Shown here in pieces: positions 206 through 16,614 of a stretch of DNA of 64,000 nucleotides. The notes below the pieces were generated by a model, which made no database searches, was not told the origin of the DNA, and saw nothing but the letters and a program-made list of their open reading frames with translations. A program made the position numbers and the translations under genes. Location of the stretch: positions 226,888-290,887 of the IMG/VR virus record IMGVR_UViG_3300042540_001399; one strand, written 5' to 3'. The number at the start of each line of letters is the position of its first letter. Position 1 is the first letter of the stretch.

Positions 206-277
206 GGTCGGTTCATCTAGGGGTCAGGATACAAGGTTTTCATCCTTGTCACACGGGTTCGAATCCCGTACCGACTA
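206..277 (+). tRNA. tRNA-Glu(TTC)
   Basis: Acceptor GGTCGGT/ACCGACT, anticodon arm CAAGG-TTTTCAT-CCTTG, T arm ACGGG-TTCGAAT-CCCGT; CCA not encoded. Confidence 0.93.
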
Positions 278-302
278 CAAACCTGTCAAGGTAGTACAGG
301 AA

Positions 303-418
303 GGTCAGGAGTGTAATGAGGCACGGTGCCAAGTCCTAAAGACACCACGGTCCAAGAGCAATTTGGACGCGAGAAGTTATAAGGTTGCTCATTGTAGGTT
401 CGAATCCTACCCTGACTT
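303..418 (+). ncRNA. Atypical tRNA-like RNA (116 nt) with enlarged central region
   Basis: Acceptor GGTCAGG/CCTGACT and canonical T arm GTAGG-TTCGAAT-CCTAC; no canonical 7-nt anticodon loop; ~47-nt extra region. Confidence 0.6.
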
Positions 419-420
419 CA

Positions 421-525
421 CGGTTCGGATCATCACCGAATAGTATGCCCAATACGATGAGAAATGAGGTGATACCTCATATGGGACTTCTGATAGATAA
501 AGGATCTATTCGGTTTGACTAACCG
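421..525 (+). ncRNA. Putative structured RNA between tRNA genes
   Basis: ACCGAATAG(435-443)/CTATTCGGT(506-514) perfect 9-bp pairing, internal ATGAGGT-GAT-ACCTCAT hairpin, outer CGGTT/AACCG. Confidence 0.35.
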
Positions 526-574
526 CGGGAAATATCAAAGAGGGTTGAAGAACTACGTACCCTCGAGTCCAATT

Positions 575-649
575 GGTCCATTGGTGTAGTGGCTAACATT
601 CATCCCTGTCACGGATGAGCCGCGAGTTCGATTCTCGCATGGACCGCCA
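575..649 (+). tRNA. tRNA-Asp(GTC)
   Basis: Acceptor GGTCCAT/ATGGACC, anticodon arm CATCC-CTGTCAC-GGATG, T loop TTCGATT, encoded CCA. Confidence 0.95.
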
Positions 650-671
650 AACTTATTAAAAATTAACCATT

Positions 672-941
672 ATGAAAACTTTTCAAGACTTGGAATTTAT
701 AAAAATAAATGATGCACCGTTTATGGTTGGTAAAAAATCCCGTATGCATTTTGATAATGGGTTCGGTGTATCTGTTGTATCACACTCTTATTCATATGGG
801 GGTCGTGATGGTCTTTATGAAGTCGCGGTCCTTGACTCTGACGACAATCTTACCTACGATACTCCAATAACCAATGATGTAATGGGTTACTTAACTGAAC
901 AAGATGTTACTAATGTCATGAAACAAGTTCAAGAGCTATAA
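672..941 (+). CDS. Hypothetical phage protein (89 aa)
   Basis: Clean ATG ORF with A-rich leader; no recognised motif. Confidence 0.7.
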   Translation: MKTFQDLEFIKINDAPFMVGKKSRMHFDNGFGVSVVSHSYSYGGRDGLYEVAVLDSDDNLTYDTPITNDVMGYLTEQDVTNVMKQVQEL

Positions 942-1026
942 AAGATGACAGTTTTTTTATTCATAACATTTTTAACGACACTTTTTTTGTTGAGAAAAAA
1001 AAGAAAGTTTTAAGTAGATAAAAAAA

Positions 1027-1100
1027 GGTCTCTTAGCTCATTAGGTTAGAGCAACTGACTCATAATCAGTAGGTGGTTGGTTCGATCCCAACAGGGACCA
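1027..1100 (+). tRNA. tRNA-Ile2/Met(CAT), most like the lysidine-type Ile2
   Basis: Acceptor GGTCTCT/AGGGACC, anticodon arm CTGA-CTCATAA-TCAG, overall resemblance to bacterial ileX-type tRNAs. Confidence 0.9.
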
Positions 1101-1145
1101 CAAAAGTATTGAATATTTTAAAACAGAAATTATTATTTATAATAT

Positions 1146-1219
1146 GCACCCGTAGCTCAGCTGGATAGAGCAACTGCCTTCTAAGCAGTAGGTCAATGGT
1201 TCGAATCCATTCGGGTGTA
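1146..1219 (+). tRNA. tRNA-Arg(TCT)
   Basis: Acceptor GCACCCG/CGGGTGT, anticodon arm ACTGC-CTTCTAA-GCAGT, T loop TTCGAAT. Confidence 0.95.
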
Positions 1220-1260
1220 CTTTTTTTTTATTTTTTTTTTGGAAATCAAAAAGTTTCCTG

Positions 1261-1268: not shown

Positions 1269-1291
1269 TTGAAATAAATAACGATAAAGAT

Positions 1292-2041: not shown

Positions 2042-2136
2042 AAAAAAAGTGGGGTTTGTTCATCAATAGAACGGCCCCACTCATTTTGTATTTTTTTGTT
2101 AAAATTTTTTATTATTTATATTATAAACATCATCAC

Positions 2137-2226
2137 ATGGACAACTCAATCATAGCGGCAATATTAACACCAATAGTTCTATTTGGTATTTTTCTTTATT
2201 TCTACTTTACAGATAAAGAATACTAA
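2137..2226 (+). CDS. 29-aa single-pass membrane peptide
   Basis: MDNSIIAAILTPIVLFGIFLYFYFTDKEY; TATTTAT motif at 2113-2119. Confidence 0.45.
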   Translation: MDNSIIAAILTPIVLFGIFLYFYFTDKEY

Positions 2227-2230
2227 AGTT

Positions 2231-2839: not shown

Positions 2840-2904
2840 AATATATTTTTTTTTATAAATATAAAGTTTTTCAAAAAGTAAATAGTTTGATAATATTTAT
2901 TAAT

Positions 2905-5261: not shown

Positions 5262-5262
5262 G

Positions 5263-6717
5263 ATGAAAAAAATAATTTTTATTCTTTTAATATTGTTTTC
5301 ATTCTACAATATAACAATCGCACAAGGACTTATCAAAAATAAAAAAGAAATTACCGAGTCTATGTGGGATCAAGGAGTGCCTGTCTTACCTGAAGATGAA
5401 TATATTTCATCTTTAATTGATAAAGTTGGATTCGATAACTTAAGACAAAGAAATAAAGCCGTTAACAAAGAAGAAGCTAAATTGTGTAGAGAAATTGGTA
5501 TTGCTTTTTACAATAGAGAAATGTATGAAGCTGCTGATTGGTATTTGGAAAGAGTACGAGGTTTTGTTGAAGTTGTTGAACTTGAACCTGAAATAGTTTT
5601 TGAAACTAAAAAAGAAGAAACCGAAGAACCTTCAGAAGATTTATCTGTGGAAGATTTGAAAAGTCTACAGTCAGACAAGGTTTTTTTACAAAACCTACCA
5701 AAAAGTTATGAAAATGTTTCACCTACAGATATGAAAAAATTGGCAGAAGAAATTGAAGGTCAAATAGAAAAACTTATTAAAGAAAAGGAAGAATTACTAA
5801 AAAGACACGCTCCTAAAGAAGTGATAGATGCTAAAGATGCGACTATAGGGTCATTAGGAAAAGAAAAAAAAATCATAGACCTATCAATAGATAAAGACAA
5901 ACTTAAAAATGAAACAAAAGTTTTGGGTATTGAAAAAAGAAATTTGAAATTTTATTTAAATTGGGCAATAGCTATAGGTTTGATATTAATATTAATAATA
6001 TTTGTTTTAATACAGAGAAAAACTATCAAAGGACAGGATAAAGAAATTGATAAACAACTAAATGACATAAATACTAAAAACACGTATTTAGAACATGCGG
6101 CAAGAATAATCAGACATGATATGCATTCTGGTATAAACACATATATTCCAAGGGGTATATCTTCTTTGGAAAAAAGGCTGACTGTCGACGACATGAAAAA
6201 TCTTAAGATCGAAGGTCCAATAAAGATGATTCGTGAAGGTTTAAATCACACCCAAAAAGTTTATAAAAATGTTTATGAATTTACAAATTTAGTTAAACAA
6301 AATGTTGTTTTAGAAAAAACCAAACAAAATATAAAAAATACTTTAGAACAGTTTTTTGTAAAAACATCATACTATAATCAAATCAAAATAAAGAATCTCC
6401 CGACTTTAGAAATTAATGAAGTTCTTTTTTGTGGGGCAATTGAAAACTTTGTGAAAAATGGTCTAAAATACAATAATAACGAAAATAAAGAAGTTTTAAT
6501 TTTTGAAGAAGATAATTATATAGTAGTACAAGATAATGGTATTGGTATGACATCAACTGAATTTGAAAAACAAATTAAAATAGTTTCTAAAGAAGATATT
6601 GGTGAAATCGGTTTAGGCTTAAATATTTCAATTGCCATTTTAAAAGAACACGGATTTAGTGTTGAATGTGAAAAAAATGAAATTGGAACTAAAATAAAAA
6701 TTAAATTTAAAAGTTAA
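5263..6717 (+). CDS. Sensor histidine kinase with extracytoplasmic helical domain (HK2)
   Basis: Signal peptide, TPR-like helices and coiled coil, one TM (WAIAIGLILILIIFVLI), H box IRHDMH, N box NFVKNGLKYN, G1 QDNGIGM, short G2 EIGLGLNIS. Confidence 0.88.
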   Translation: MKKIIFILLILFSFYNITIAQGLIKNKKEITESMWDQGVPVLPEDEYISSLIDKVGFDNLRQRNKAVNKEEAKLCREIGIAFYNREMYEAADWYLERVRGFVEVVELEPEIVFETKKEETEEPSEDLSVEDLKSLQSDKVFLQNLPKSYENVSPTDMKKLAEEIEGQIEKLIKEKEELLKRHAPKEVIDAKDATIGSLGKEKKIIDLSIDKDKLKNETKVLGIEKRNLKFYLNWAIAIGLILILIIFVLIQRKTIKGQDKEIDKQLNDINTKNTYLEHAARIIRHDMHSGINTYIPRGISSLEKRLTVDDMKNLKIEGPIKMIREGLNHTQKVYKNVYEFTNLVKQNVVLEKTKQNIKNTLEQFFVKTSYYNQIKIKNLPTLEINEVLFCGAIENFVKNGLKYNNNENKEVLIFEEDNYIVVQDNGIGMTSTEFEKQIKIVSKEDIGEIGLGLNISIAILKEHGFSVECEKNEIGTKIKIKFKS

Positions 6718-6721
6718 AAAA

Positions 6722-7159
6722 ATGATTGATTCTATTTTATTAGTTGATGATGAGGATTTATTCCACTTGGTGTTTGAAGACGCTTGTTCTTTATTGGACA
6801 TAAGTTTATCTTTAAAATCTATAAATAGTGCAGATGAAGCGGCATCAATGTTTAAAAAATGGTTAGAAGAAAAAACACCAGAAAGTAGACCTGAATGTGT
6901 TTTTGTTGATCTTAATATAATTGGTAGTTCATTTGATGGTATTGAACTTATAAGAAAAATAAATTTCGAATACGGAAATCATGTTGTAATAGGAATTATT
7001 TCATCATCTAACGAACCAGAAGAACAAGCTAAAGCACTACAAGCAGGTGCACAATTTTGGATTATAAAATCTGATGAAATTGAACCTAGACTTGAAGAAT
7101 TCAAAAAAGATTATGATCAGTATAAAAACAGAACCGCACCATTTAAAGTATACAAATGA
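6722..7159 (+). CDS. Single-domain response regulator (CheY-like receiver)
   Basis: ILLVDDED acidic pocket, phospho-acceptor in VFVDLN, IISSS, conserved K in WIIK; no output domain. Confidence 0.92.
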   Translation: MIDSILLVDDEDLFHLVFEDACSLLDISLSLKSINSADEAASMFKKWLEEKTPESRPECVFVDLNIIGSSFDGIELIRKINFEYGNHVVIGIISSSNEPEEQAKALQAGAQFWIIKSDEIEPRLEEFKKDYDQYKNRTAPFKVYK

Positions 7160-7833
7160 TTAAAATAGATAGTAATACTAAAAAAACTTTAATTGATCTT
7201 TATAACAAAAAGGGTATAGGTCTTGAAGGTAATATTACTAAACTTATAGATGTTGAAAACGACGAAGAGTTCAAAACGTATTTAAAAGAATGTAAGGCTA
7301 AAGACGAAGAAAAAAGAAAAAAACGTCTTGACATGACAAAAAAAATACAAAAACAAAATGAAGATTTGGTTGTTGCAAACACAGAAAACAATAGAATTAT
7401 GGAGGAACTTCAACAAAGTTTACTTGAAGTTGAAGAATCCAAAACAATTTTTGAAAACCAAAACAAAGAACTCAACGATTGGAAAAAAGAAAATTTAGAA
7501 CTGACTGAAAAATTACAAATTGAAATGTCAAACGCTGAAATGGCTAAGTTAGAAGCCTTGAAGGCTAAGGAAATGGCGGAAAATGATTTAGACTTGTTAC
7601 AGAAAAAAAATCAAACAGAACTTATTTCTACTATAGTCAGAGTTGCTTTATGGGTAATTGTTGGTGTTGGTATAATTACTACTGGTGTTTATATGTTCAC
7701 TTTATTATTAGGTAAAGACACACAGGTTATTAGTGCTGCGTGGTCAAATATTTTTGGTATTTTACTTACCAATGCATTTTCAATAGTGGGTACTATTATG
7801 GGGATTAAATATGCAACTGAAAATAAACAATAA
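7156..7833 (+). CDS. Coiled-coil protein with two C-terminal TM helices
   Basis: Long heptad region then VALWVIVGVGIITTGVYMFTLLL and AAWSNIFGILLTNAFSIVGTIMGI; ATGA overlap with the receiver gene. Confidence 0.8.
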   Translation: MIKIDSNTKKTLIDLYNKKGIGLEGNITKLIDVENDEEFKTYLKECKAKDEEKRKKRLDMTKKIQKQNEDLVVANTENNRIMEELQQSLLEVEESKTIFENQNKELNDWKKENLELTEKLQIEMSNAEMAKLEALKAKEMAENDLDLLQKKNQTELISTIVRVALWVIVGVGIITTGVYMFTLLLGKDTQVISAAWSNIFGILLTNAFSIVGTIMGIKYATENKQ

Positions 7834-7843
7834 AAAATAGATT

Positions 7844-8680
7844 ATGTTACTTAAAGTAGGATCAGAAGGGGCTGATGTAAAAAAACTCCAAGAAAAATTA
7901 GGTGTTGAAACAATAGGAAAGTTTGGACCTAAAACCGAAGCTGCGGTAAAAGCATGGCAAAAAGCAAATGGATTAAAAGATGATGGTATTGTTGGTGATG
8001 CAACTTGGAGCAAAATGTTTGGGGAATCTACCCCAAAAACAAATGTTATTAAAGAAGATGTTGTTATACCAAGTGGTGGTCCTTTAAATATTGAAAAGTT
8101 AAAAGGACACATACCTGATTCTGTTTTGGCCCAAATTCCGGAAACCGCAAAAAAATTTAATATTACAAACAATTTAAGATTAGCACACTTTTTATCACAA
8201 TGTGGTCATGAATCTGGTGGATTCAAAGCTGTCAGTGAAAATTTAAATTATTCAGCCGATGGTTTAAAAAAGATTTTTGGAAAATACTTTCCGGGTAACC
8301 TGAATGAATCTTACGCTCGTAAACCCGAAAAAATTGCGTCCCGTGTTTATGGTAACAGGATGGGAAATGGTGATGAGGCGTCAGGCGAAGGATATAAATT
8401 CAGAGGTAGGGGTTACATCCAACTTACAGGAAAAAGTAACTATACAAATTTTTCTAAATTTATAGGTGAAGATTGTGTTTCAAATCCTGATTTAGTTGCA
8501 ACAAAATATCCTTTAGCGTCTGCGGCATTCTTTTTTGATTCAAATAAATTGTGGTCTATTTGTGACAAGGGAGCCGATGATGCCACTGTTACATCTGTAA
8601 CCAAAAGAGTTAATGGGGGAATTTTAGGTTTATCAGACAGAATTAAACACTTTAAAGAGTATTATAACCTTATTAAGTGA
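7844..8680 (+). CDS. Endolysin: peptidoglycan-binding domain plus glycoside hydrolase family 19
   Basis: PG_binding_1 (LKVGSEGADVKKLQEKL..GKFGPKTEAAVKAWQ..DGIVGDATW) and GH19 motifs (LAHFLSQCGHES, ENLNYS, FRGRGYIQLTGKSNY, TKRVNGG). Confidence 0.93.
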   Translation: MLLKVGSEGADVKKLQEKLGVETIGKFGPKTEAAVKAWQKANGLKDDGIVGDATWSKMFGESTPKTNVIKEDVVIPSGGPLNIEKLKGHIPDSVLAQIPETAKKFNITNNLRLAHFLSQCGHESGGFKAVSENLNYSADGLKKIFGKYFPGNLNESYARKPEKIASRVYGNRMGNGDEASGEGYKFRGRGYIQLTGKSNYTNFSKFIGEDCVSNPDLVATKYPLASAAFFFDSNKLWSICDKGADDATVTSVTKRVNGGILGLSDRIKHFKEYYNLIK

Positions 8681-8716
8681 TATTTATAATAAAATAAACC
8701 ATAAAAAACAAATTTT

Positions 8717-8884
8717 ATGAAATTAACTAAAGAACAAATTATGGGAATTATCAGACACGGACTAACATTCGTAGGTGGTATTCTTATAATGAAAGGGCTT
8801 GTTACTGAGTCAGTCGTTGCAGACATAACTGGTGCACTTATGACTTTAACAGGTGCTATTTGGTCTATTGTTGATAAAAAATAA
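8717..8884 (+). CDS. Small 2-TM holin-like protein (55 aa, not in ORF track)
   Basis: MKLTKEQIMGIIRHGLTFVGGILIMKGLVTESVVADITGALMTLTGAIWSIVDKK, directly after the endolysin; resembles Pam3-gp28-type putative holins. Confidence 0.75.
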   Translation: MKLTKEQIMGIIRHGLTFVGGILIMKGLVTESVVADITGALMTLTGAIWSIVDKK

Positions 8885-8901
8885 ATTGTGTAAATAGACT
8901 T

Positions 8902-8930
8902 AAAAACCCTCGATAATTTCGGGGGTTTTT
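8902..8930 (+). terminator. Rho-independent terminator
   Basis: AAAAACCCTCGA-TAAT-TTCGGGGGTTTTT hairpin with U tract. Confidence 0.75.
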
Positions 8931-8967
8931 ATTTTTGTAACATATTTATTATATAAAAATTAAATTT

Positions 8968-9624
8968 ATGAAAAAGTTGATAACTGAAAACGAAAAAAAT
9001 AGAATTAGAAAAATGAATTCTATTGATGAAAGTTTATTTTCAGATGTGTTGGCATCAATACAAAAATCAGAAACTTTTCAGGATCTTAAAAAGAAATTCA
9101 AGGAATTAACGGGTGTTGACTTTGAAGAAAAAGAAAAGTCGGGAGATGTAAGCAAAGATTTCAAAAATTATAAAATTACCGAACCTAATGATGATGACAT
9201 CAAGTTTTATAAAAAAATACTTGAAAAATTGGACGCACCTAATACTAAAGAAAATTTAGCGTTTCTTTACGCGTGGAGACAAGCGGAGGGTGCAAAATCC
9301 GCCTTTAACCCTTTTAATACCACACAAGAAATGGATAGTTCAACATTTATGAACTGTCTGAAGAAAAAAGATAATAAGTGTATTGGGGGAGTTAGAAATT
9401 ATAAATCTGAAAAAGATGGAATAGATGCTACAGTCAAAACTTTGAAAAATGGTAGATATGATTGTATTGTTAATGGTTTACAAAAAAATAAAGGGTCAAA
9501 AGATATCGCCAAATGTAGTTCTTTAGATACTTGGGGAACAAAAGACGGTATTTTAAGAGTTTTAGATGGTGGTAAAATAAATCCACCTGAAATATCAAGA
9601 TCCACAATAAAAAAAGTTGATTAA
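8968..9624 (+). CDS. Virion-type protein with lysozyme-like C-terminal domain
   Basis: AWRQAEG..FNPFNTTQ..GVRNY..DGIDATVKTLKNGRY pattern; N-terminal LITE..RIRKM..IDES motif. Confidence 0.55.
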   Translation: MKKLITENEKNRIRKMNSIDESLFSDVLASIQKSETFQDLKKKFKELTGVDFEEKEKSGDVSKDFKNYKITEPNDDDIKFYKKILEKLDAPNTKENLAFLYAWRQAEGAKSAFNPFNTTQEMDSSTFMNCLKKKDNKCIGGVRNYKSEKDGIDATVKTLKNGRYDCIVNGLQKNKGSKDIAKCSSLDTWGTKDGILRVLDGGKINPPEISRSTIKKVD

Positions 9625-9625
9625 T

Positions 9626-10234
9626 ATGGAAGAATACGTAGGGATTATTATTGCGTTTATAACAGGTGTGTTGGGACCAATATTACTTTTATACTTGAAA
9701 AACAAATTAGAAAAAAAAGAAAAGCCAGACATGGTCAAAGACACTCTGAGAGTTGCTGAGTTGGTAAATAATAAAATTGAACATATTCGTGAAGAATTTA
9801 ATGCCGATCGTGTTTGGGTTACACAATTTCATAATGGTGGTAATTTTTATCCTACAGGTAAATCAATGGCAAAATTTTCAATAATGTATGAAACAGTAAA
9901 TTCTGGCGTTTCTTCAGTTCAAACTAATTTTCATAATATACCTGTTAACCTTTTTTCTAAGTCTATAAATCAATTATTAAATAACGATACTATTGAAATT
10001 GCCGACTACAAAGATGAAACAATAGCAACTTACGGACTAAAATATATTGCTGAAGATACAGGTTGTAAATCAAGTTACTTATTTGCAATAAAAACAATTG
10101 ATGAAAAGTTTATTGGTACATTAGGTTTAGATTATACCAAAAGAAAAACTAAATTAGATATTGAATCTATAAATCATTTATTGGTTCACGCAACGTCTTT
10201 AGGTGGTGTTTTGATGACACACTTGTCTGAATAA
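9626..10234 (+). CDS. N-terminal TM plus GAF-like domain protein (T4 holin T-like architecture)
   Basis: TM GIIIAFITGVLGPILLLYL; GAF-like region NADRVWVTQFHNGG...LFAIKTIDEKFIGTLGLDY. Confidence 0.55.
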   Translation: MEEYVGIIIAFITGVLGPILLLYLKNKLEKKEKPDMVKDTLRVAELVNNKIEHIREEFNADRVWVTQFHNGGNFYPTGKSMAKFSIMYETVNSGVSSVQTNFHNIPVNLFSKSINQLLNNDTIEIADYKDETIATYGLKYIAEDTGCKSSYLFAIKTIDEKFIGTLGLDYTKRKTKLDIESINHLLVHATSLGGVLMTHLSE

Positions 10235-10269
10235 TTTTTTATTACAAAAAAATTTATTATTTTTGTAGT

Positions 10270-10758
10270 ATGAATATTTTTTTTCTTGACTACGATACCC
10301 AAAAATGTGCACAATATCATTGCGATAAACATGTGGTCAAGATGGTATTAGAAACTGCACAACTTTTATGTGGGGTTCATCATACAACCCCCCAAGTTAC
10401 CCCCCAAGTTCCCTACAAGTTATCCCACAAAAATCACCCATGCGCAATATGGACTCGTGAAAGTTTATCAAACTACTTATATCTTTGTGATCTTGGTTTA
10501 GAATTATGTAATGAATATAGTTTTAGATATGGTAAAACACATAAGTCACAACAAGTAATCGAGTGGTGTCTTGATAATAAACCAAACATAGTTGATAAAG
10601 GTTTTACCACACCACCAAAAGCAATGCCCGATGAATATAAAGTTTTTGACGTTATTGAATCTTATAGAAACTACTATCGTGGGGCAAAAAAAAGTTTTGC
10701 TTCATGGAAAAATAGACAAATACCCGATTGGTTTCAAACTGATGAAGTATTTATATGA
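10270..10758 (+). CDS. Pyrimidine-dimer DNA glycosylase / endonuclease V-like protein
   Basis: MNIFFLD..CAQYHCDKHVVKMVLETAQLL and HKNHPCAIW motifs of the Pyr_excise family; TATTTTTG promoter element at 10258. Confidence 0.8.
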   Translation: MNIFFLDYDTQKCAQYHCDKHVVKMVLETAQLLCGVHHTTPQVTPQVPYKLSHKNHPCAIWTRESLSNYLYLCDLGLELCNEYSFRYGKTHKSQQVIEWCLDNKPNIVDKGFTTPPKAMPDEYKVFDVIESYRNYYRGAKKSFASWKNRQIPDWFQTDEVFI

Positions 10759-12296
10759 TAAAATCATATATGAAAGGTTTATTAAATGAACATTTGACTA
10801 GAATAAGATCATTGATGTCTATCAATGAATCTTTAGTTGATGCATACCCAAAATTTTCGAAAAAAATATTTGATGAAGTAGACCCTACTTGGGGTGGTGG
10901 GCCAAATTCGCATTCATCAAGACACCCTGATGCATCCGGCAAAGATTGGTTTAGTAATAACGCATACGACATCATGGCACCTGAAGGGACACCAATATAT
11001 TCAATATCGGAAGGTTATGTTGATAAAATTACCGACAATCCACCAGGTTTAAGATCAGTTGGTGGTAAGAGAATTTATGGGGACAGTTTAACCATTAGAG
11101 GAACAGGGGGTGATCCCGATGTTTTCTACACACATGTAACAAAAATTGTTGTTGAAGAGGGACAATACGTTGATAGGGGTCAATTATTAGCATTCATAAT
11201 CAAAGGGGAGTTGGGTATACCTGAACACGTTCATGTTGCAGTAAAAGTTGGTGATGTGAAAGATTTCTTAGATGTTGATGGAAACATAAACAGAGTCAAT
11301 ATTGATTTAGTGGATAGACTAAAAATCTTACCAACAAACAAGGAACTTGAAGTGACAACCGACCCAAAAACAATAATGGGCGCTGCGGCCGGTCTTACCG
11401 CATCAGCTATAAGTTCTTTAAATATTAATAGACCTGAGTCTGACATCAGTGGCATTGCAACAAGATTCGGTATTAAAGATACTGATGTTAACATGGATTC
11501 GGTATCAGGTGTTTTGAATAAAATAATATTATCTTCTGAAGGTCTTGGTACTGATGAAACTGGAATTCATGATGCAATAAAGAAATTAAAAAGTTGTTAT
11601 GAACTTGATGAAATTAACAAAATTGTAGAAAGAAAAGAAATCGACGGAAAAAAATACAAAGACATTTATGATTATATAAATAGTGAAATGAATTATGGTG
11701 ATGAGCTGTTTGTAAAAAGTTTAGTAAAAACCATAAATAATATATGTCCTGATACCGTAACTGATAAAGGTACTCAAATAGTGAAAGTAACAAGATCATC
11801 ATCTTTAGGATCTGGAATCGATAGAGTCAGTCCTATAAAATTATTAAATGATCTAAAATCATATGGATTATCTGATAAGGCCGCCAAAGGTGTTGTTGCG
11901 AATGCTTTTGGTGAAAGTGGGTTTAACGTTAAGGCTAAAGGAGATTCTGGACCCAACGCCGAAAACAACACAAGATCAATAAATATAGATGGTAAAAAAT
12001 ACTGTTCGTTTGGATTGTGGCAATATAATGTCTGTGGTGGTATGGGGGTTTCTTATTTGAAGAACTATAATATAGATGTTGACAGATCAACAGACGCTGA
12101 AAAAATCAGGGTTCTATTTGATTATAATAAACAAATTGAATTTATGTCTAAAAGAATTAAAGAAGAACAATCCAAAAGCGAAAAAGATGTTAGAACATGG
12201 ATTGATTGGATTGTTGATAATGTAGAAAGACCATCAGATAGATACGGTGCAAAAATGAAAAGACAAGAATTTGCAAAACAACAAGGTTGGTCTTAA
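10755..12296 (+). CDS. Multidomain wall hydrolase: M23 peptidase, annexin-like repeat, phage tail lysozyme
   Basis: M23 (AYDIMAPEGTPIY..YTHV..HVHVAV); GLGTDE annexin-like segment; tail lysozyme (GLSDKAAKGVVANAFGESGFN..SFGLWQYN). Confidence 0.8.
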   Translation: MIKSYMKGLLNEHLTRIRSLMSINESLVDAYPKFSKKIFDEVDPTWGGGPNSHSSRHPDASGKDWFSNNAYDIMAPEGTPIYSISEGYVDKITDNPPGLRSVGGKRIYGDSLTIRGTGGDPDVFYTHVTKIVVEEGQYVDRGQLLAFIIKGELGIPEHVHVAVKVGDVKDFLDVDGNINRVNIDLVDRLKILPTNKELEVTTDPKTIMGAAAGLTASAISSLNINRPESDISGIATRFGIKDTDVNMDSVSGVLNKIILSSEGLGTDETGIHDAIKKLKSCYELDEINKIVERKEIDGKKYKDIYDYINSEMNYGDELFVKSLVKTINNICPDTVTDKGTQIVKVTRSSSLGSGIDRVSPIKLLNDLKSYGLSDKAAKGVVANAFGESGFNVKAKGDSGPNAENNTRSINIDGKKYCSFGLWQYNVCGGMGVSYLKNYNIDVDRSTDAEKIRVLFDYNKQIEFMSKRIKEEQSKSEKDVRTWIDWIVDNVERPSDRYGAKMKRQEFAKQQGWS

Positions 12297-12358
12297 TTTT
12301 TTTTTAGTACCTATTGTTTTATAGTTTTATTATTTATATAATTAAAAAAAAAGAAAAA

Positions 12359-12502
12359 ATGGAAGATATCAATCAATTAGAAAATGAAATTTTTGCCTAC
12401 ATCAATGATAAAGGTCAAGAAGTTTTTACACCTAATTTTGAATTTGCGAACATCATGGCAAAAAAATATGGTACTTTAAAAGTTTTTGTACAAAAATTTT
12501 AA
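12359..12502 (+). CDS. Small hypothetical protein (47 aa)
   Basis: ATG at 12359 after A-rich leader; TATTTAT at 12331. Confidence 0.5.
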   Translation: MEDINQLENEIFAYINDKGQEVFTPNFEFANIMAKKYGTLKVFVQKF

Positions 12503-12521
12503 AAAAAAAATTACAAAGTAC

Positions 12522-12552
12522 TTGACAGATACAAATAAATGTAGTAACTTTG
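12522..12552 (+). promoter_or_regulatory. Promoter upstream of the large ncRNA
   Basis: TTGACA (12522-12527), 17-nt spacer, TAACTTTG (12545-12552), which also matches the Bacteroidota TAnnTTTG element. Confidence 0.6.
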
Positions 12553-12559
12553 TAAAACA

Positions 12560-13490
12560 AATCAGGAAAAGACCTGAAACGTTCTTTGAAAAATAGATTA
12601 TCCGTTCAGGAAAAGTTTTGTCAGATTCTATGACAAGTAATTGGAATGAAATTTCCATCTTTGAATGATAAAGATATTGGGCCGTGTATAGTCCATAAAA
12701 TAAACTACGAAAGTAGGATAAAGTGAACCCTTAAGTGTGTTGGGTTTGCGGCTTCTTCGGGAGCTTGAGTACACAAGCGGGATACCATTTTGGCTTTAGT
12801 ATTGAGGGCAACGCTGTAAAGAATAAGGCAAAATGATTTGGCGATGTGGGTCGTCTGATTGAGGTGGGAACACCAATAGGAATAACCCGTAGGAATATTG
12901 CAAGACTCAAAGTCATCCAACTTTAATATTGCGTTTTCCAATATAATAGGTTACTTAAAACCAAGTGGAAGGACCACAAGGTAAGATGTAGAACGAGTGG
13001 TGTCGCTAACATCCTTCACTCAGGTTTACCAAAACCCGGTGATGAAGTAGTCTAAAAATATGGAGGTAGGGATATCTCACGGAGTAGTTGAGTATCGACT
13101 CGTTCAAAAGATGGGTTGGCTCGGTTGGCGGACCACTACTTCGACAATCCACGACACAAAACTTATGACTATTGAATTAAGTCCATTAATTAATACATTA
13201 AGGAAAAGTGTCCGTCAGGTTTGGATGAAAGGTGACTACATAGTAATGAGCCGTTCATTGCACACAGAGATCCCAAGTCGATGTGTAATTATCCGAAAAA
13301 CCTTTAGTCCCGCAAGGACGAGTTGGGAAGGCATTCTCGAAAAGAGTAGATTAGGATGAGAGTAATTCAAACCTTAAGGAGTGGTAAACCTAAAAGACCG
13401 TCACTGAGAAATACTTCTCAAAAGGAAGTGGATAAGAGTAGAAACAATAATGACTCTAAAGGTTCTCACACAAACGTGTAATCTCAGCGT
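12560..13490 (+). ncRNA. Large structured ncRNA, GOLLD-like
   Basis: ~0.9 kb without a credible ORF, GC-richer than flanks, bracketed by promoter and terminator; tetraloop hairpins CTAC-GAAA-GTAG (12705-12716) and GCTTC-TTCG-GGAGC (12751-12764); long-range pairs GGAGTAG/CTACTTC (13081/13136) and CTGAGA/TCTCAG (13404/13482); boundaries approximate. Confidence 0.65.
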
Positions 13491-13523
13491 TTTATTTTAA
13501 TGGAGCCACCGGTAAAGAACATT

Positions 13524-13545
13524 AGGGACTGATAGTCCCTTTTTT
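13524..13545 (+). terminator. Rho-independent terminator after the ncRNA
   Basis: AGGGACT-GAT-AGTCCCT followed by T tract. Confidence 0.75.
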
Positions 13546-13565
13546 GTTTTATAATATTTATATAT

Positions 13566-13775
13566 ATGACAACAATTCACGAAGTCCAACAAGTTCTAAC
13601 AGTAAACACTCCTTTTGGCGAAGCTCAAGTTTTATTTATTATTGATTATGGAATCCATAGAAATTCAATATGGGTATGTTCATCATTTGATGATGGTAAA
13701 ATAAGACATTTTGATACCAATCAGATATCTGTTACAATAAATCATACATTAAATTTCAATATGAAAGATAAATAA
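13566..13775 (+). CDS. Hypothetical protein (69 aa)
   Basis: ATG ORF preceded by TATTTAT (13555). Confidence 0.65.
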   Translation: MTTIHEVQQVLTVNTPFGEAQVLFIIDYGIHRNSIWVCSSFDDGKIRHFDTNQISVTINHTLNFNMKDK

Positions 13776-13848
13776 TTGCTTTTTCTGATTTATCATATAT
13801 TTATTATTAAAAATATAATAAAATAATAAAAAAAACAAAATTAAAATT

Positions 13849-14310
13849 ATGAAAAGAATTGTTAGATTAACTGAGTCAGATCTTACTAGAATAGTAAGAA
13901 GAGTTATTAGCGAACAAACAAAACCATCGGCTAAGGATTATTTTGTCAACGAAAATCAAACTTCAATGCCAGGAGGGACAAACTTTTTTGCCGTAACTTC
14001 GGTTGGAGCTCCTACACCAATTAAAGATGGAAATTACAAAAGTTTCCAAGTAACTGTTTCAGGTGTCCAATATTATAAAAGTACTAGTGGTGAAGGATGG
14101 AAAAAAACAAGAAATTTTACAGAAAAACTACAACACAGATGTGGAGCTAAAGCTAACTTTTGGGCCGCAGAGTGGAATGGTGGTATTCCTGAAGTAGATA
14201 CGGGTTCTGCGGGATATGTATCAAAAATGGGAGGTGGATTAGAGTCGACTTCAAATACGTACTGTAATTCAAAAGGAGCTAAGAACCAATCAAGTATTGG
14301 ACTTATGTAA
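13849..14310 (+). CDS. Hypothetical virion-type protein
   Basis: N-terminal RLTESDLTRIVRRVISEQ motif; TATTTAT at 13798. Confidence 0.7.
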   Translation: MKRIVRLTESDLTRIVRRVISEQTKPSAKDYFVNENQTSMPGGTNFFAVTSVGAPTPIKDGNYKSFQVTVSGVQYYKSTSGEGWKKTRNFTEKLQHRCGAKANFWAAEWNGGIPEVDTGSAGYVSKMGGGLESTSNTYCNSKGAKNQSSIGLM

Positions 14311-14327
14311 TCAAAATACAAACAAAT

Positions 14328-14355
14328 AAAAAAACCCTCAATTGAGGGTTTTTTT
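14328..14355. terminator. Bidirectional terminator
   Basis: A7-CCCTCA-AT-TGAGGG-T7 between convergent genes. Confidence 0.8.
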
Positions 14356-14377
14356 ATTTTATTAATATAGTTCTTGA

Positions 14378-14929
14378 TTATTTGTCAAAAACATTTGTAT
14401 CACTATCGGTGAACATTTCATTAAAATCCCTAGTATCTACAGAATATACCCCTTTGTAGTCATCACCATCCTTCCAAATAATTTGTAACTTAGGGTAGTT
14501 AGGATTATCTTTCAAATTGATGATCATTAATTTTTCTGTAATATCATTGTAATACCCTGTTTTATCTGTTACTGAAAAAAATGCAAAATCGGCGTTAGAT
14601 TTAATCATTTTAATATCTAAAGTGTATGTTTTATCAACGATAGAGTCATTTTGGTCGTAATCATAAAAATGATGACTTAATACGTTTTTATCAAAATCAA
14701 AAGTATAAATTTGAAATCCTTCAGTGATAGAATCACTAATTTTATTTTTGAATGAACCTACAGACATTGGGAAATCGGTATAATCAATCTGTTTTGTTGA
14801 ATTAACAAAGATTTGTTTGGTCCCATCCAAAGGTTGTGATTTTGTCCCTGTGAATACTTCTTTAGTAACAAAAGATGAAAAAAGTACTATTGATAAAAGT
14901 ACGAAGATGGATTTGAAGATTGTTTTCAT
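14378..14929 (-). CDS. Exported hypothetical protein
   Basis: Signal-peptide-like N-terminus MKTIFKSIFVLLSIVLFSSF; TATATTTG element on the minus strand at 14967-14974. Confidence 0.7.
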   Translation of the reverse strand: MKTIFKSIFVLLSIVLFSSFVTKEVFTGTKSQPLDGTKQIFVNSTKQIDYTDFPMSVGSFKNKISDSITEGFQIYTFDFDKNVLSHHFYDYDQNDSIVDKTYTLDIKMIKSNADFAFFSVTDKTGYYNDITEKLMIINLKDNPNYPKLQIIWKDGDDYKGVYSVDTRDFNEMFTDSDTNVFDK

Positions 14930-15051
14930 GGGTTTTTATTTTTTAGTTATTAAATTATTAATAATACAAATATATGTGGTTTTTTTTAATTTACAAACAC
15001 AAAATTTGTTTTTTTTCTTTTTTCCCCATCAAATATGATGGGGATTTCAGA

Positions 15052-15442
15052 TGGTGGAGGCGGAGGGACTCGAACCCTCGTCCATAATATCCTGTCAGAT
15101 AAGGACTACATGTTTAGGTTGATATTTTCTAATATCCCAAAATAGTTGATTTGTTCTTCACCATCGTAAATCAACAACCAATGGTCCCGAATCGGATTTA
15201 GAGAGCCATCCGGTGTGCTCTATCAAACTACGACTTCTGTTGCTAGGTTATATGTCTGCCGACCCCCCGTTTCCGTAAACTTCTTAAGCTACAGTAACTT
15301 CAGAACCTCTTACTAATCCAAGAGTTTCCATTTTGTTTAGCACATTGCCAGTTGTTTTCTAAGTCAGTTTTTAAAGAGATTAACTCAGTCCCTACATGCC
15401 CTTATTCTTCAGCCAATACCTGTCAAATCCAAAAACGCCCCC
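15052..15442 (-). ncRNA. ssrA: tmRNA
   Basis: 5' GGGGGCGTTTTTGGATTTGACAGG; 3' GAGGGTTCGAGTCCCTCCGCCTCCACCA; G3.U70 wobble in the acceptor stem; internal tag ORF 15349-15284. Confidence 0.93.
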
Positions 15443-15534
15443 ATATTTTCAATGAACTTTTAATATAAATATTATAAGTACAAATATAAGTACTATTTTA
15501 ATTATATCCAAATTTGGGTATATTTATTTTTAAG

Positions 15535-16614
15535 ATGTCTGAACACAGTGAAATATACGATTTTTTGAAAAAAGTTTCCAAAGGTGACACATCATTTATG
15601 CCATATAGTAGATGGAATTTACCTTACCCAATTTATGATATAAAGTATAACAGCCAATCACCAGCGTCAAGTGTTATTTGGATTGAATTTGAAAATACCG
15701 AAAAATATTTAAATGCCTTAGGGATCGATGATGATGAAGATATATTTGTTTGGAATAGATTTATGGAAAATTACTATTATGACGATTATGATTACTACCG
15801 TTATGAAGAAGATTGGAAAGAAGGTTATATTATAAAAGATTTCAATCCTGAAAACATCCGATTAGTTGAAAATATACTTATGTTATCTAATCCTTCATTA
15901 AGTCTAGATATTAATAATGATGAAAGTTGTTCTAATGTTTCCTTGTATTTGTCAAGAAGATTTGATGATATTGATTACATTATTAGTGAATTTGGTAATC
16001 TAAATGAAGATTGTAAACGAAGAGCGGTAGTTGACGTTTTAGATAATGAAACTAAAAATCCATTTCGTAAATTTGGTATCACTGAAATTTATAAAAGACA
16101 CAGATTCAAAACTACTGTTAATGTGTTATTACATTGGTATAACGTAATTGACAATAAAGAATTAGACCTAATTGAATTATTACAAGAACTACTGAAAAAA
16201 TTTGATAATGAAAGTAGAGGTAATTGGTATGAGTTAGAATATAATGTTTGGTGTGATGATTTTGACAATGAATCGTTTCAAAAGGAAACAAAAAGAAACT
16301 TAGAAAAAATTATAGAAAATTTGGAAGAAAGTATTGAAGGAAAGGTTGATCTTGAAACAATAAATTCCTTATATAATAAAGTCATAAGTTTGGGTGGGTT
16401 TGGTAGATGGATTAATATTAAAGAAAAGAAAGCTGAAGTTAACTTTAGAGATTTGGATACTAAAAAAGGGATACTAAAATTTTACTATAGAAGCCCACAA
16501 ACCGGAAAGGCAACTGAAGAAAGGTCTGTCAAAAATTTGGAAGAACTCAACTTATCACTTTATCAACCTGAGCTTTTTGAGCATGTAAAAAAAATCAAGA
16601 AAATTATATTGTAA
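15535..16614 (+). CDS. Hypothetical acidic protein
   Basis: Long ORF; ATG 15535 chosen because TATTTAT lies at 15521. Confidence 0.7.
   Translation: MSEHSEIYDFLKKVSKGDTSFMPYSRWNLPYPIYDIKYNSQSPASSVIWIEFENTEKYLNALGIDDDEDIFVWNRFMENYYYDDYDYYRYEEDWKEGYIIKDFNPENIRLVENILMLSNPSLSLDINNDESCSNVSLYLSRRFDDIDYIISEFGNLNEDCKRRAVVDVLDNETKNPFRKFGITEIYKRHRFKTTVNVLLHWYNVIDNKELDLIELLQELLKKFDNESRGNWYELEYNVWCDDFDNESFQKETKRNLEKIIENLEESIEGKVDLETINSLYNKVISLGGFGRWINIKEKKAEVNFRDLDTKKGILKFYYRSPQTGKATEERSVKNLEELNLSLYQPELFEHVKKIKKIIL

What the first reader, a model, noticed from the sequence alone, without database searches (positions are those of the whole stretch)
12522..13545. ~0.9-kb independently transcribed, highly structured RNA (GOLLD-like giant ncRNA)
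Seen: its own promoter (TTGACA-17-TAACTTTG) and terminator; no credible ORF; GC-richer than the flanks; GNRA and UUCG tetraloop hairpins and long-range helices (GGAGTAG/CTACTTC, CTGAGA/TCTCAG). Established: GOLLD RNAs are ~800-nt ornate RNAs from phages and lake metagenomes, often near tRNAs, with unknown function. Inference: this is a GOLLD member or a related new class, here placed between wall hydrolases and tmRNA and driven by a host-type promoter.
Basis: partly seen in the sequence, partly recalled or inferred. Interest (0 to 1): 0.75.

Follow-up and report, generated by a model that had tools for sequence, protein, structure and literature searches.

The report
GOLLD RNA gene in lake jumbo phage
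This stretch encodes a genuine, very abundantly transcribed GOLLD RNA, a known family of giant phage RNAs that self-assemble into hollow cages, in a 291-kb freshwater phage; it is a clear new example of a known family whose function is still unknown.

Summary
Window 13080-13490 (+) matches the Rfam GOLLD model end to end (320 bits, cut-off 150, E 8e-91). No other RNA family matches, even at E <= 1. The roughly 400 nt upstream (12679-13079) are homologous to the 5' "cap" domain of the cryo-EM-solved GOLLD env-38. In 44 aligned sequences (43 distinct), 98.5% of cells pair and 61 of 100 predicted pairs keep pairing through changes on both sides.

The promoter (TTGACA-17-TAACTTTG) and the terminator are conserved in 47 non-redundant relatives. 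The promoter is of the Bacteroidota sigma-A type (-7 box TAnnTTTG), not classical sigma-70. Three metatranscriptomes show RNA depth of 10^2-10^4 confined to about 12524-13443, with near-zero flanks. The 99-aa ORF inside the RNA is not conserved.

The host record is a 290.9-kb, about 99% complete lake jumbo phage, probably of a Flavobacterium-like host: it has no Shine-Dalgarno usage and carries 22 tRNAs plus a tmRNA. Motifs that form the inter-subunit bridges of the env-38 14-mer cage are retained.

Side finding: GOLLD lies in a conserved module of lysis cassette, 47-aa orphan protein, GOLLD, tmRNA.

Verdict: new member of a known kind.

The parts
12522..12527 (+). -33/-35 promoter element TTGACA
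   Evidence: One search gives the position. One search shows it conserved (TTGACA, TTGAC or TTG) at a fixed 17-nt spacing from the -7 box in the 47 non-redundant homologs.
12545..12552 (+). -7 promoter box TAACTTTG, matching the Bacteroidota sigma-A consensus TAnnTTTG. The inferred transcription start is about 12557.
   Evidence: Searches give the position. One search shows TA(A/T)nTTTG in nearly all homologs. (PMC9723704) places the sigma-A box at -12 to -5. The start site is inferred, not mapped. RNA depth is 0-0.55 in bin 12340-12523 and 113-11,046 in bin 12524-12707.
12557..12678 (+). Clade-specific 5' leader. It holds hairpins at 12562-12577, 12618-12636 and 12642-12657, and the nearly invariant box GTTCTTTG at 12581-12588.
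   Evidence: The fold is (thermodynamically unremarkable, z = -0.65). The hairpins covary within the clade (alignment blocks). The leader is absent or replaced in other clades, while the GTTCTTTG box is kept. The solved env-38 construct starts after this region.
12679..13079 (+). GOLLD 5' (cap) domain, 401 nt
   Evidence: 100 predicted pairs, 98.5% of cells paired (36-46% with slid partners), 61 pairs with compensatory change, covariation score 0.41 (shuffle maximum 0.21); aligns over positions 2-396 of 401 at 66-68% identity to env-38-like loci; motif-by-motif match to env-38.
13080..13490 (+). GOLLD 3' (ring) domain, the part covered by Rfam RF02032
   Evidence: 320 bits, E 7.8e-91, model positions 1-416 of 416. 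One search gives the same hit in the whole-genome search, and it is the only copy in the phage.
13143..13200 (+). A/U-rich, poorly conserved linker (J13/15). It is disordered and faces the cage interior in the env-38 structure.
   Evidence: The unpaired stretch is seen in the covariance-model alignment. Conservation dips to 0.49 at 13168-13187. The structural role comes from PMC12286853.
13491..13523 (+). 3' tail beyond the Rfam model, with the conserved motif AATGGAGCCACCGGT
   Evidence: Alignment. In one metatranscriptome contig an Illumina adapter is joined after about 13503-13505 (table 7), which may mark a processed 3' end.
13524..13546 (+). Intrinsic terminator: a 7-bp hairpin (13524-13540) followed by a T run
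   Evidence: calls it. Searches show it conserved with compensatory stem changes. RNA depth falls to about 0-15 beyond 13628.
12359..12502 (+). 47-aa orphan protein gene that ends 20 nt before the GOLLD promoter. It is a conserved neighbour of GOLLD in this phage group.
   Evidence: Searches find one copy beside GOLLD in about 57 loci; 191 protein clusters, and 12 of 12 loci retrieved by the protein alone have GOLLD downstream. There is no Pfam, PHROG or fold match.
10755..12296 (+). Cell-wall hydrolase (M23 peptidase plus phage lysozyme domains), the likely endolysin of the lysis cassette upstream of GOLLD
   Evidence: Pfam PF01551, PF18013; PHROG endolysin and peptidase families. Relatives have other hydrolase types, such as VanY, at the same position.
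8717..8881 (+). Holin homolog (Phage_holin_10 family in relatives), the start of the conserved lysis cassette
   Evidence: tblastn gives 64% identity over 55 aa to the PF23987-annotated gene of L088.
15052..15442 (-). Phage-encoded tmRNA, convergent with GOLLD
   Evidence: RF00023, 114 bits. ARAGORN missed it. It is present in the RNA libraries at depth 9-75. A tmRNA lies downstream of GOLLD in 29 of 45 evaluable loci and in 12 of 12 protein-first loci.
206..1220 (+). The last four genes of the phage's 22-gene tRNA array, co-oriented with GOLLD and about 11.3 kb upstream
   Evidence: One search covers the window; one search covers the whole genome (array at genome positions 221,915-228,107).

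Best explanation
This is the GOLLD RNA gene of a 290.9-kb freshwater jumbo phage whose host is probably a Flavobacterium-like member of the Bacteroidota.

Shown:
- The gene has a conserved promoter, a conserved intrinsic terminator and no coding capacity.
- Its RNA is 10^2-10^3 times more abundant than the neighbouring phage mRNAs in three environmental metatranscriptomes.
- It has the two-domain GOLLD architecture. The 401-nt 5' domain is homologous to that of env-38, and the 411-nt 3' domain matches Rfam end to end. The two are joined through an unconserved A/U-rich linker and preceded by a clade-specific leader of about 120 nt.

Inferred:
- The host sigma-A holoenzyme starts transcription at about 12557. 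The roughly 990-nt primary transcript may be trimmed at the 3' end near 13505.
- Like env-38 (PDB 9MEE), the RNA folds without protein and assembles into a closed dihedral homo-oligomeric nanocage, with the linker pointing inward. The expected form is a 14-mer, because the env-38-type elements are present. Supporting this, the donor loops and kissing-loop complements of bridges B1-B8 are conserved across the family, and one bridge pair covaries.

Most speculative:
- What the cage does. My preferred reading is that it is a late-infection RNA compartment or scaffold acting on the translation apparatus (tRNA, tmRNA or ribosomes). The gene always travels with tRNA arrays or a tmRNA, it sits directly after the lysis cassette, and GOLLD is reported to pull down ribosomes.

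Approximate probabilities: GOLLD identity 0.97; cage assembly 0.7; translation-linked role 0.3.
For: Identity:
- RF02032, 320 bits against a cut-off of 150, model positions 1-416 of 416.
- nothing else at E <= 1.
- single copy in a 99%-complete viral record.

5' domain:
- 98.5% of cells paired against 36-46% with slid partners; 61 compensatory pairs; covariation score 0.41 against a shuffle maximum of 0.21.
- 66-68% identity over 395 nt to env-38-like loci.
- motif-level match to the env-38 sequence.

Transcription:
- RNA word depth over 12524-13443 is 1,800-32,000 (X15), 64-509 (X16) and 446-9,900 (X18). Flanks are 0-25, apart from one X16 bin at 13812-13995 (192). The DNA control is almost flat (15-30, about 16 outside the GOLLD bins).
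- Zero-mismatch RNA contigs include X15 12874-13052 at depth 567. Zero-mismatch contigs of neighbouring genes reach only depth 3-25.

Promoter and terminator conservation.

Non-coding.

Bridge motifs (positions taken from the tables):
- The GAAA loop at 12709-12712 is invariant.
- GAGGG(C/U)(A/G)AC is present in 45 of 46 sequences.
- The GNRA loop at 12867-12870 is kept.
- GGA/UCC (B4) and UGGU/ACCA (B5) are complementary in 46 of 46.
- The UCAAAAG loop is kept in 43 of 46.
- The L20-J13/15 pair 13203-13273 covaries (G-C 39, C-G 6, A-U 1).
- L21a keeps its palindromic GC.

Context:
- 22 tRNAs.
- tRNAs are always co-oriented with GOLLD; a tmRNA lies downstream in 29 of 45 loci and in 12 of 12 protein-first loci.
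- the lysis cassette lies immediately upstream.

Host:
- an SD-like motif precedes only 2.4% of 252 ORFs, the same as the controls.
- sigma-A -7 box.
- the only bacterial-genome hit is a contig binned with a Flavobacterium MAG.
- weak hit to a Nonlabens phage.

Literature:
- PMC12286853: cage structure, stability down to 12.5 nM, ribosome pull-down, expression rising at lysis.
- PMC12990946: stoichiometry depends on which 5' elements are present.
Against: - No assembly, structure or function was measured for this RNA. Retention of contact motifs is necessary for a cage but does not prove one.
- Bridges B4 and B5 are invariant, so they give no covariation support.
- Bridges B9 and B10, and the receptor sides of the A-minor bridges, could not be mapped. 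The only copy of the env-38 sequence I could read is a lossy machine-read PDF (816 of 833 letters).
- GOLLD stoichiometry varies (10-, 12- and 14-mers), so "14-mer" is a guess.
- Both transcript ends are inferred. The RNA data are assembler contigs at community level, and the summed depths include related GOLLD alleles at 90% likeness or more.
- Linkage to tRNA and tmRNA genes may only mean that structured-RNA genes cluster or are co-regulated, as Weinberg et al. caution (PMC5737381).
- In this window three small genes separate GOLLD from the tmRNA.
- The host was not identified directly.
Confidence: 0.9

Rival explanations
1. It is a new class of giant RNA that only resembles GOLLD.
For: The Rfam model covers only the 3' 411 nt. 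The leader of about 120 nt and the conserved 3' tail lie outside any described model.
Against: The 3' domain scores more than twice the gathering threshold over the full model. The 5' domain aligns along its whole length to env-38-type GOLLDs and shares their signature motifs. The leader is dispensable in sister clades.
Confidence: 0.02
2. The region encodes a small protein (the 99-aa ORF at 13060-13359 or another), and the apparent structure is incidental.
For: An ATG-initiated 99-codon ORF exists on the + strand.
Against: Homologs carry 2-13 in-frame stops and indels that are not multiples of three. Substitutions are spread evenly over codon positions. The longest ORF per homolog ranges from 20 to 105 aa with no conserved frame. 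Base-pair covariation is pervasive.
Confidence: 0.01
3. It is a GOLLD cage whose role is storage or timed release of its own interior cargo, or of tRNA precursors ("inhibited storage"), rather than action on ribosomes.
For: Some GOLLDs carry a tRNA in the J13/15 linker, which faces the cage interior (PMC12990946). A divergent relative, L034, has a predicted tRNA-Ser inside its 5' region and a tRNA directly after the RNA. tRNA arrays are co-oriented with GOLLD.
Against: The linker here (13143-13200) is about 58 nt, A/U-rich, poorly conserved and holds no tRNA. The phage's tRNA array is 11 kb away.
Confidence: 0.15
4. It is a GOLLD RNA acting as a decoy or shield against host defence or RNA turnover. 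For example, it might soak up RNases, RNA-sensing defence proteins or the host's own ribosome-rescue factors during late infection.
For: The RNA is extremely abundant relative to phage mRNAs. It sits next to late lysis genes. The phage supplies its own tmRNA.
Against: There is no direct evidence. No known defence or anti-defence gene was seen nearby. An elaborate, conserved quaternary architecture is more than a simple sponge would need.
Confidence: 0.1
5. It is a ribozyme or another catalytic RNA, and its oligomerisation is secondary.
For: Size, complexity and many invariant nucleotides prompted this suggestion for large ornate RNAs (PMC5737381). About 145 columns of the 5' domain are invariant.
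Against: The solved structures reveal no active site or substrate. The invariant positions that I could map fall on inter-subunit bridges.
Confidence: 0.05

Closest known systems
GOLLD RNA env-38 (marine metagenome; cryo-EM 14-mer, PDB 9MEE; Kretsch et al. 2025, PMC12286853)
   Same: Both have the two-domain architecture. The 5' domain starts with the same GGCC...GGUC hairpin followed by the CGAAAG hairpin and GGAUAAAGUG. They share the GAGGG-AAC, GNRA, GGGA/AUCC and GUGGUG/ACCA motifs. The 3' domain has the same Rfam structure, the same A/U-rich internal linker, a similar core size (812 against 833 nt) and a phage context near tRNA genes.
   Different: Identity is only about 65-68% (measured against env-38-like loci). 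Ours has an extra conserved-promoter leader of about 120 nt and a conserved 3' tail that are absent from the solved construct. The B4 kissing loop has 3-4 complementary bases, against 5-6 in env-38. J13/15-L20 uses GGA/UCC where env-38 uses AGA/UCU. No structure exists for ours.
Streptococcus agalactiae GOLLD (12-mer full length, 10-mer 3' domain; PDB 9L0R and 9LMF, as reviewed in PMC12990946)
   Same: Same family, and the same 3' ring domain that can oligomerise on its own.
   Different: Sag GOLLD is about 700 nt and lacks P9, P11a-c and P21b, which changes the stoichiometry. Ours is of the long env-38 type and retains the L21a GC palindrome. The hosts differ: a prophage of a Gram-positive bacterium against a lytic-type jumbo phage of a probable Bacteroidota host.
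GOLLDs of cultured Acinetobacter phages (e.g. Bestia, AM24) and Caulobacter phiCbK-like phages
   Same: All are phage-borne GOLLDs. The 3' domain is alignable at 66-75% identity.
   Different: Only window 13204-13502 aligns. The 5' domain is unrelated at the sequence level, which illustrates the variable 5' half of the family.
ROOL RNA (Rfam; 8-mer nanocage, PDB 9MDS)
   Same: It works in a similar way: a large phage- or prophage-associated RNA near tRNA genes that forms an RNA-only cage with an interior linker.
   Different: Sequence and fold are unrelated, and there is no covariance-model hit here even at E <= 1. In ROOL the 5' and 3' halves are intertwined; in GOLLD they are separate domains.
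OLE RNA
   Same: A large, ornate, abundant bacterial non-coding RNA.
   Different: OLE forms a dimer bound to membrane proteins in extremophilic Firmicutes. There is no covariance-model hit here.

Membership tests
GOLLD RNA (Rfam RF02032) | Covariance-model match to the conserved 3' domain above the curated gathering score, over the whole model | tested here: met
   320 bits against 150, E 7.8e-91, positions 1-416 of 416, not truncated. Reproduced.
GOLLD RNA (Rfam RF02032) | A large structured 5' domain preceding the 3' domain, giving more than about 800 nt in total for the long type | tested here: met
   The core 12679-13490 is 812 nt. The 5' domain has 100 predicted pairs, 61 of them with compensatory changes. 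It is homologous to the env-38-type 5' domain.
GOLLD RNA (Rfam RF02032) | L20-J13/15 base pairing, the covariation-supported pseudoknot of the original description, shown by cryo-EM to be inter-subunit bridge B7 | tested here: met
   13202-13274 is G-C in 46 of 46 sequences. 13203-13273 is G-C in 39, C-G in 6 and A-U in 1.
GOLLD RNA (Rfam RF02032) | A non-coding, independently expressed and abundant RNA | tested here: met
   no conserved ORF. RNA depth of 10^2-10^4 is confined to the element in three metatranscriptomes.
GOLLD RNA (Rfam RF02032) | Phage or prophage location, commonly near tRNA genes | tested here: met
   290.9-kb viral record; a 22-gene tRNA array lies 11.3 kb upstream; tRNAs are co-oriented with GOLLD in relatives.
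GOLLD RNA (Rfam RF02032) | Protein-free assembly into a closed dihedral homo-oligomer (10-14 subunits) | not testable with these tools
   Only indirect evidence is available. The donor and kissing motifs of bridges B1-B8 are conserved. B9, B10 and the receptor sides were not mapped.
ROOL RNA | Covariance-model match to the Rfam ROOL model | tested here: not met
   no hit at E <= 1 in 12300-13700 on either strand.
OLE RNA | Covariance-model match to the Rfam OLE model | tested here: not met
   no hit at E <= 1.
Bacteroidota sigma-A promoter | A TAnnTTTG box at -12 to -5, with a TTG element about 20 nt upstream | tested here: inconclusive
   The motif and spacing are present and conserved in 47 homologs. 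The phage lacks SD sites, as Bacteroidota do. The start site and the sigma factor were not determined experimentally, and a single match is not rare by chance.

The most novel reading that the evidence does not exclude
In this group of freshwater Bacteroidota phages, GOLLD may be one part of a fixed functional module rather than a free-standing gene: lysis cassette, then a 47-58-aa orphan beta-beta-alpha-beta protein, then GOLLD, then a phage tmRNA. Under this reading the small protein would be the first dedicated GOLLD partner (for example an assembly, gating or cargo-loading factor). The cage would act together with the phage tmRNA on stalled or host ribosomes just before lysis.

The evidence does not exclude this. 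The protein family (191 clusters) was found next to GOLLD in every locus examined, including 12 of 12 loci retrieved by the protein alone. A tmRNA follows GOLLD in 29 of 45 loci.

Against it, the protein is absent from the leaderless sister clade and from env-38-like loci, so inherited synteny among related phages explains the data equally well.
Probability: 0.12. Interest if true: 0.75.

Novelty: new member of a known kind. Interest (0 to 1): 0.38.

Why it matters
GOLLD is one of the largest and most elaborate bacterial or phage RNAs. It has been known since 2009 and since 2025 is known to build an RNA-only cage larger than a ribosome, yet it has no known function and few tractable systems. 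This locus adds no new kind of RNA. It does provide several useful things:

- a complete gene model (promoter, leader, two domains, tail and terminator) backed by 47 non-redundant natural variants;
- direct environmental evidence that the RNA is made at levels orders of magnitude above the neighbouring phage mRNAs;
- a probable host phylum whose genetics are workable (Flavobacterium);
- a recurrent genomic module (lysis genes, an orphan mini-protein, GOLLD, tmRNA) that yields concrete, testable hypotheses about timing (late) and partners (translation and ribosome rescue).

The family alignment, with its independent variation in the 5' and 3' domains, is also a resource for testing which inter-subunit bridges are under selection.

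Tried and rejected
1. Terminal 5'/3' helix. The invariant leader box GTTCTTTG (12581-12588) is complementary to AAAGAAC in our 3' tail (13513-13519). Homologs have a plain A-run there and pairing is not kept (2-15% at key positions). Rejected. Pairing of the same box with UAAAGAAU at 12817-12824 was rejected by eye, because the majority of homologs read differently there.

2. Closing helix 12584-12587 / 13081-13084 predicted by RNAalifold. It conflicts with the Rfam P-helix 13081-13087 / 13136-13142, which covaries. I treat it as an artefact of cutting the alignment at 13085.

3. Not supported.

4. Bringing env-38 into the tools by reference. A 28-nt env-38 probe found six viral loci, but none is env-38 itself. 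The supplementary text is lossy (816 of 833 letters). Residue numbers were therefore mapped by motif only, and B9, B10 and the A-minor receptors were left unmapped.

5. Sigma-70 scan. It does not call the promoter. TAnnTTTG alone is not enriched in the window, and the composite motif occurs once against 0.52 expected. The promoter call therefore rests on conservation, not on motif statistics.

6. The small protein. No Pfam hit and no PHROG hit. Back-translation search is impossible for so short and variable a profile. The AlphaFold model (pLDDT 79, beta-beta-alpha-beta) has no significant match in PDB or BFVD (best E > 0.3). No function could be assigned.

7. Cultured relatives and host. The neighbouring proteins give only weak or no hits in the phage collection, and the GOLLD DNA hits only Acinetobacter phages, in the 3' domain. 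The host is inferred indirectly.

8. ARAGORN misses the tmRNA of this phage type. Rfam and nhmmer were used instead.

9. Literature. No paper in the library reports a function for GOLLD, and a search for papers naming both GOLLD and tmRNA returned six that I did not read for a reported linkage. Flavobacteriia and Bacteroides MAG hits are already in the published GOLLD alignment, so the host phylum is not new.
Full report
**What is there**

The Rfam scan of the whole window gives a full-length match to GOLLD (RF02032) at 13080-13490 on the + strand. It scores 320 bits against a gathering score of 150, with E 7.8e-91 and model positions 1-416 of 416. A permissive scan of 12300-13700 at E <= 1 finds no other family, so ROOL and OLE are excluded. 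The window is the last 64 kb of a 290,887-bp viral record rated 99% complete. The record holds a single GOLLD copy, so this is a jumbo phage.

**The observation**

- The region has 40-43% G+C, against 22-33% in the flanks.
- A 7-bp hairpin plus T run lies at 13524-13546.
- The composite TTGACA-N17-TAACTTTG lies at 12522-12552.
- The sigma-70 scan does not call this promoter, and the motif alone is not statistically unusual. Conservation is what matters.

To test conservation I collected 76 viral contigs sharing a 3' GOLLD motif and reduced them to 47 non-redundant full-length copies. Both promoter boxes and their spacing are kept in nearly all of them, as TTGACA-N17-TA(A/T)nTTTG followed by TAAAAC. 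Sequence further upstream diverges.

TAnnTTTG at -12 to -5 is the sigma-A box of Flavobacterium (PMC9723704), which places the start at about 12557. The terminator stem is also kept, with compensatory changes.

The 99-aa ORF inside the RNA is broken in every homolog and shows no codon-position bias.

- GGAGTAG/CTACTTC is correct and covaries.
- CTGAGA actually pairs with TTCTCA at 13463-13468, not with TCTCAG.

**The 5' half**

Rfam models only the 3' domain. The upstream 535 nt are 68-88% identical in dozens of viral contigs, and homology begins at the -7 box.

I aligned 44 sequences (A1; 43 of them distinct). RNAalifold gives 99-100 pairs, of which 61 keep pairing through changes on both sides. 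My own controls are as follows:
- 98.5% of cells pair, against 36-46% when partners are slid by 1-3 columns.
- The covariation score is 0.41, against 0.06-0.10 for slid partners.
- 300 column shuffles give a mean of 0.19 and a maximum of 0.21.

The sequence of the solved GOLLD env-38 is printed in the supplement of PMC12286853. Its first nucleotides match window 12679 onward, motif for motif: a GGCC...GGUC hairpin, then the CGAAAG hairpin, then GGAUAAAGUG. Further blocks match throughout. Loci that share a 28-nt exact probe with env-38 align to our 5' core over positions 2-396 of 401 at 66-68% identity.

The RNA therefore consists of:
- a clade-specific leader (12557-12678);
- a 401-nt cap domain (12679-13079);
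- a 411-nt ring domain (13080-13490), which contains the poorly conserved A/U-rich linker at about 13143-13200;
- a 33-nt conserved tail;
- the terminator.

**Transcription**

Public lake, river and aquaculture metagenomes hold the sequence, and six metatranscriptomes hold 50-67% of its sampled words. I laid three RNA runs and one DNA run on 10500-16000.
- Word depth over 12524-13443 is 1,800-32,000 (X15), 64-509 (X16) and 446-9,900 (X18).
- The flanks are 0-25, apart from one X16 bin at 13812-13995 (192). The DNA control is almost flat (15-30, about 16 outside the GOLLD bins).
- Zero-mismatch RNA contigs exist. Examples are X15 12874-13052 at depth 567 and X18 12721-12824 at depth 320.
- Zero-mismatch contigs of neighbouring genes appear at depth 3-25. 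This phage was therefore active in those samples, and its GOLLD exceeded adjacent mRNAs by 10^1-10^3.
- Depth is 0-0.55 in the bin just upstream of the promoter and about 0-15 beyond the terminator, which supports an independent transcript.
- One contig joins an Illumina adapter after about 13503-13505, which may mark a processed 3' end.

Caveats: these are assembler contigs, the summed depths include related alleles, and the ends were not mapped.

**How it probably works**

GOLLD env-38 forms a protein-free D7 14-mer cage 380 A across. It is stable down to 12.5 nM, with 5' domains as caps, 3' domains as rings and the linker inside (PMC12286853). Other GOLLDs form 10- or 12-mers depending on which 5' elements are present (PMC12990946).

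I used the published bridge tables and mapped by motif, because the machine-read env-38 text has lost 17 letters. The following are retained across 46 family members:
- the GAAA donor loop at 12709-12712 (B1);
- GAGGG(C/U)(A/G)AC at 12804-12812 (B2), in 45 of 46;
- the GNRA loop at 12867-12870 (B3);
- GGA/UCC (B4) and UGGU/ACCA (B5), complementary in 46 of 46;
- the UCAAAAG loop (B6), in 43 of 46;
- the L20-J13/15 pairing (B7), with compensatory change (G-C 39, C-G 6, A-U 1);
- the GC palindrome of L21a (B8).

I infer that this RNA assembles into an env-38-like cage (probability about 0.7). B9, B10 and the receptor sides were not mapped.

**Context and a functional guess**

The phage carries 22 tRNAs in one array 11.3 kb upstream and a tmRNA 1.5 kb downstream on the opposite strand. 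The tmRNA is also present in the RNA libraries.

In 57 non-redundant GOLLD loci, tRNAs are always co-oriented with GOLLD. A tmRNA follows GOLLD in 29 of the 45 loci that have enough downstream sequence.

Immediately upstream lies a lysis cassette:
- a holin homolog at 8717-8881;
- a 205-aa protein;
- a Pyr_excise-like protein;
- an M23/lysozyme hydrolase at 10755-12296.

The order is conserved in relatives, although the hydrolase domains vary. Together with the published rise of GOLLD at lysis and the ribosome pull-down, this favours a late-infection role connected with translation. That remains speculation (about 0.3). Rival roles (tRNA storage, decoy, catalysis) are listed with their tests.

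**Host**

There is no close cultured relative. Four indirect lines point to Bacteroidota, probably Flavobacterium-like:
- the conserved sigma-A-type promoter;
- the lack of Shine-Dalgarno motifs (2.4% of 252 ORFs, equal to the controls) with A-rich leaders (compare PMC6847099, listed);
- the only bacterial-genome hit is a 7.4-kb contig binned with a Flavobacterium MAG;
- a weak hit to a Nonlabens phage.

Flavobacteriia MAG hits already appear in the published GOLLD alignment, so the phylum is not new for the family.

**Side finding**

A 47-aa ORF (12359-12502) ends 20 nt before the promoter.
- Homologous 47-58-aa ORFs end 30-95 nt before the -7 box in 31 of 36 evaluable loci.
- A profile finds exactly one copy beside GOLLD in about 57 loci.
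- In the large protein database the family has 191 clusters, all unannotated.
- Four divergent members (34-39% identity where BLASTP reported one) were looked up. All 12 loci retrieved have a full-length GOLLD directly downstream, followed by a convergent tmRNA.
- The protein is absent from the leaderless sister clade and from env-38-like loci.
- Its model is a beta-beta-alpha-beta mini-fold with pLDDT 79 and no significant structural neighbour.

Inherited synteny and a functional partnership both remain possible.

**Verdict**

The finding is real and correctly interpreted: it is a new, well-supported member of the known GOLLD family. It is ordinary in kind. Its value lies in the complete gene model, the expression evidence and the recurrent lysis / mini-protein / GOLLD / tmRNA module.

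Noticed in passing
window 12359-12502 (+): A 47-aa orphan protein gene ends 20 nt before the GOLLD promoter. The family has 191 clusters of 44-87 aa, with no Pfam, PHROG or fold match. It was found beside GOLLD in every locus examined, including 12 of 12 loci retrieved by the protein alone. It is absent from the leaderless GOLLD clade and from env-38-like loci.
   Followed up: partly
window 15052-15442 (-): A phage-encoded tmRNA (Rfam 114 bits) that ARAGORN does not detect. It is present in metatranscriptomes at depth 9-75. In relatives it lies convergent to GOLLD only 110-340 nt beyond it. Here three small ORFs (13566-13775, 13849-14310, and 14378-14929 on the minus strand) are inserted between the two.
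   Followed up: partly
window 13503-13505: In one metatranscriptome contig (X15) an Illumina adapter sequence follows directly after about 13503-13505, about 20 nt before the terminator hairpin. This may mark a processed or alternative 3' end of GOLLD inside the conserved tail motif AATGGAGCCACCGGT.
   Followed up: no
window 12581-12588: The box GTTCTTTG, about 25 nt downstream of the inferred start, is nearly invariant in all clades, including those that lack the rest of the leader. No conserved pairing partner was found, and its role is unexplained.
   Followed up: partly
L002-L077 compared with window 12545-13490: Identities of the 5' and 3' domains to our copy are uncoupled among homologs. 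Examples (5'/3'): L038 88%/80%, L002 83%/96%, L065 69%/88%. This suggests recombination between the two domains or very different rates of change, and fits their being separate structural domains.
   Followed up: no
whole phage genome (G000); window 206-1220 holds the last four tRNAs: The phage has 22 tRNA genes in one co-oriented array (genome positions 221,915-228,107). It shows essentially no Shine-Dalgarno usage (2.4% of 252 ORFs), has A-rich translation-start contexts and 31% G+C. These are traits of a Bacteroidota-infecting phage.
   Followed up: partly
window about 63940-64000, and genome position 1-60: Both ends of the viral record lie in a collagen-like Gly-X-Y repeat (GGT ACT AAT GGA ACT TCA ...). 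The assembly probably broke inside a repetitive fibre gene rather than at true genome termini.
   Followed up: no
L034 (IMGVR_UViG_2700989470_000002), oriented coordinates 532-1572: A divergent GOLLD (44-52% identical to ours). ARAGORN predicts a tRNA-Ser inside its 5' region and a suppressor-type "tRNA-Stop" directly after its 3' end.
   Followed up: no
window 10270-10758 (+): A 162-aa protein with a borderline match to pyrimidine-dimer DNA glycosylase (Pyr_excise, 23.7 bits against a cut-off of 23). It sits inside the conserved holin-to-endolysin cassette in all relatives, an odd place for a DNA-repair enzyme.
   Followed up: no
L081 (NZ_JBJTND010000053.1, Flavobacterium sp. MAG, 7.4-kb contig): This is the only bacterial-genome hit for this GOLLD subtype. 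The contig carries GOLLD plus a tmRNA 2.4 kb downstream, so it is probably a phage fragment binned with the MAG rather than chromosomal DNA.
   Followed up: no
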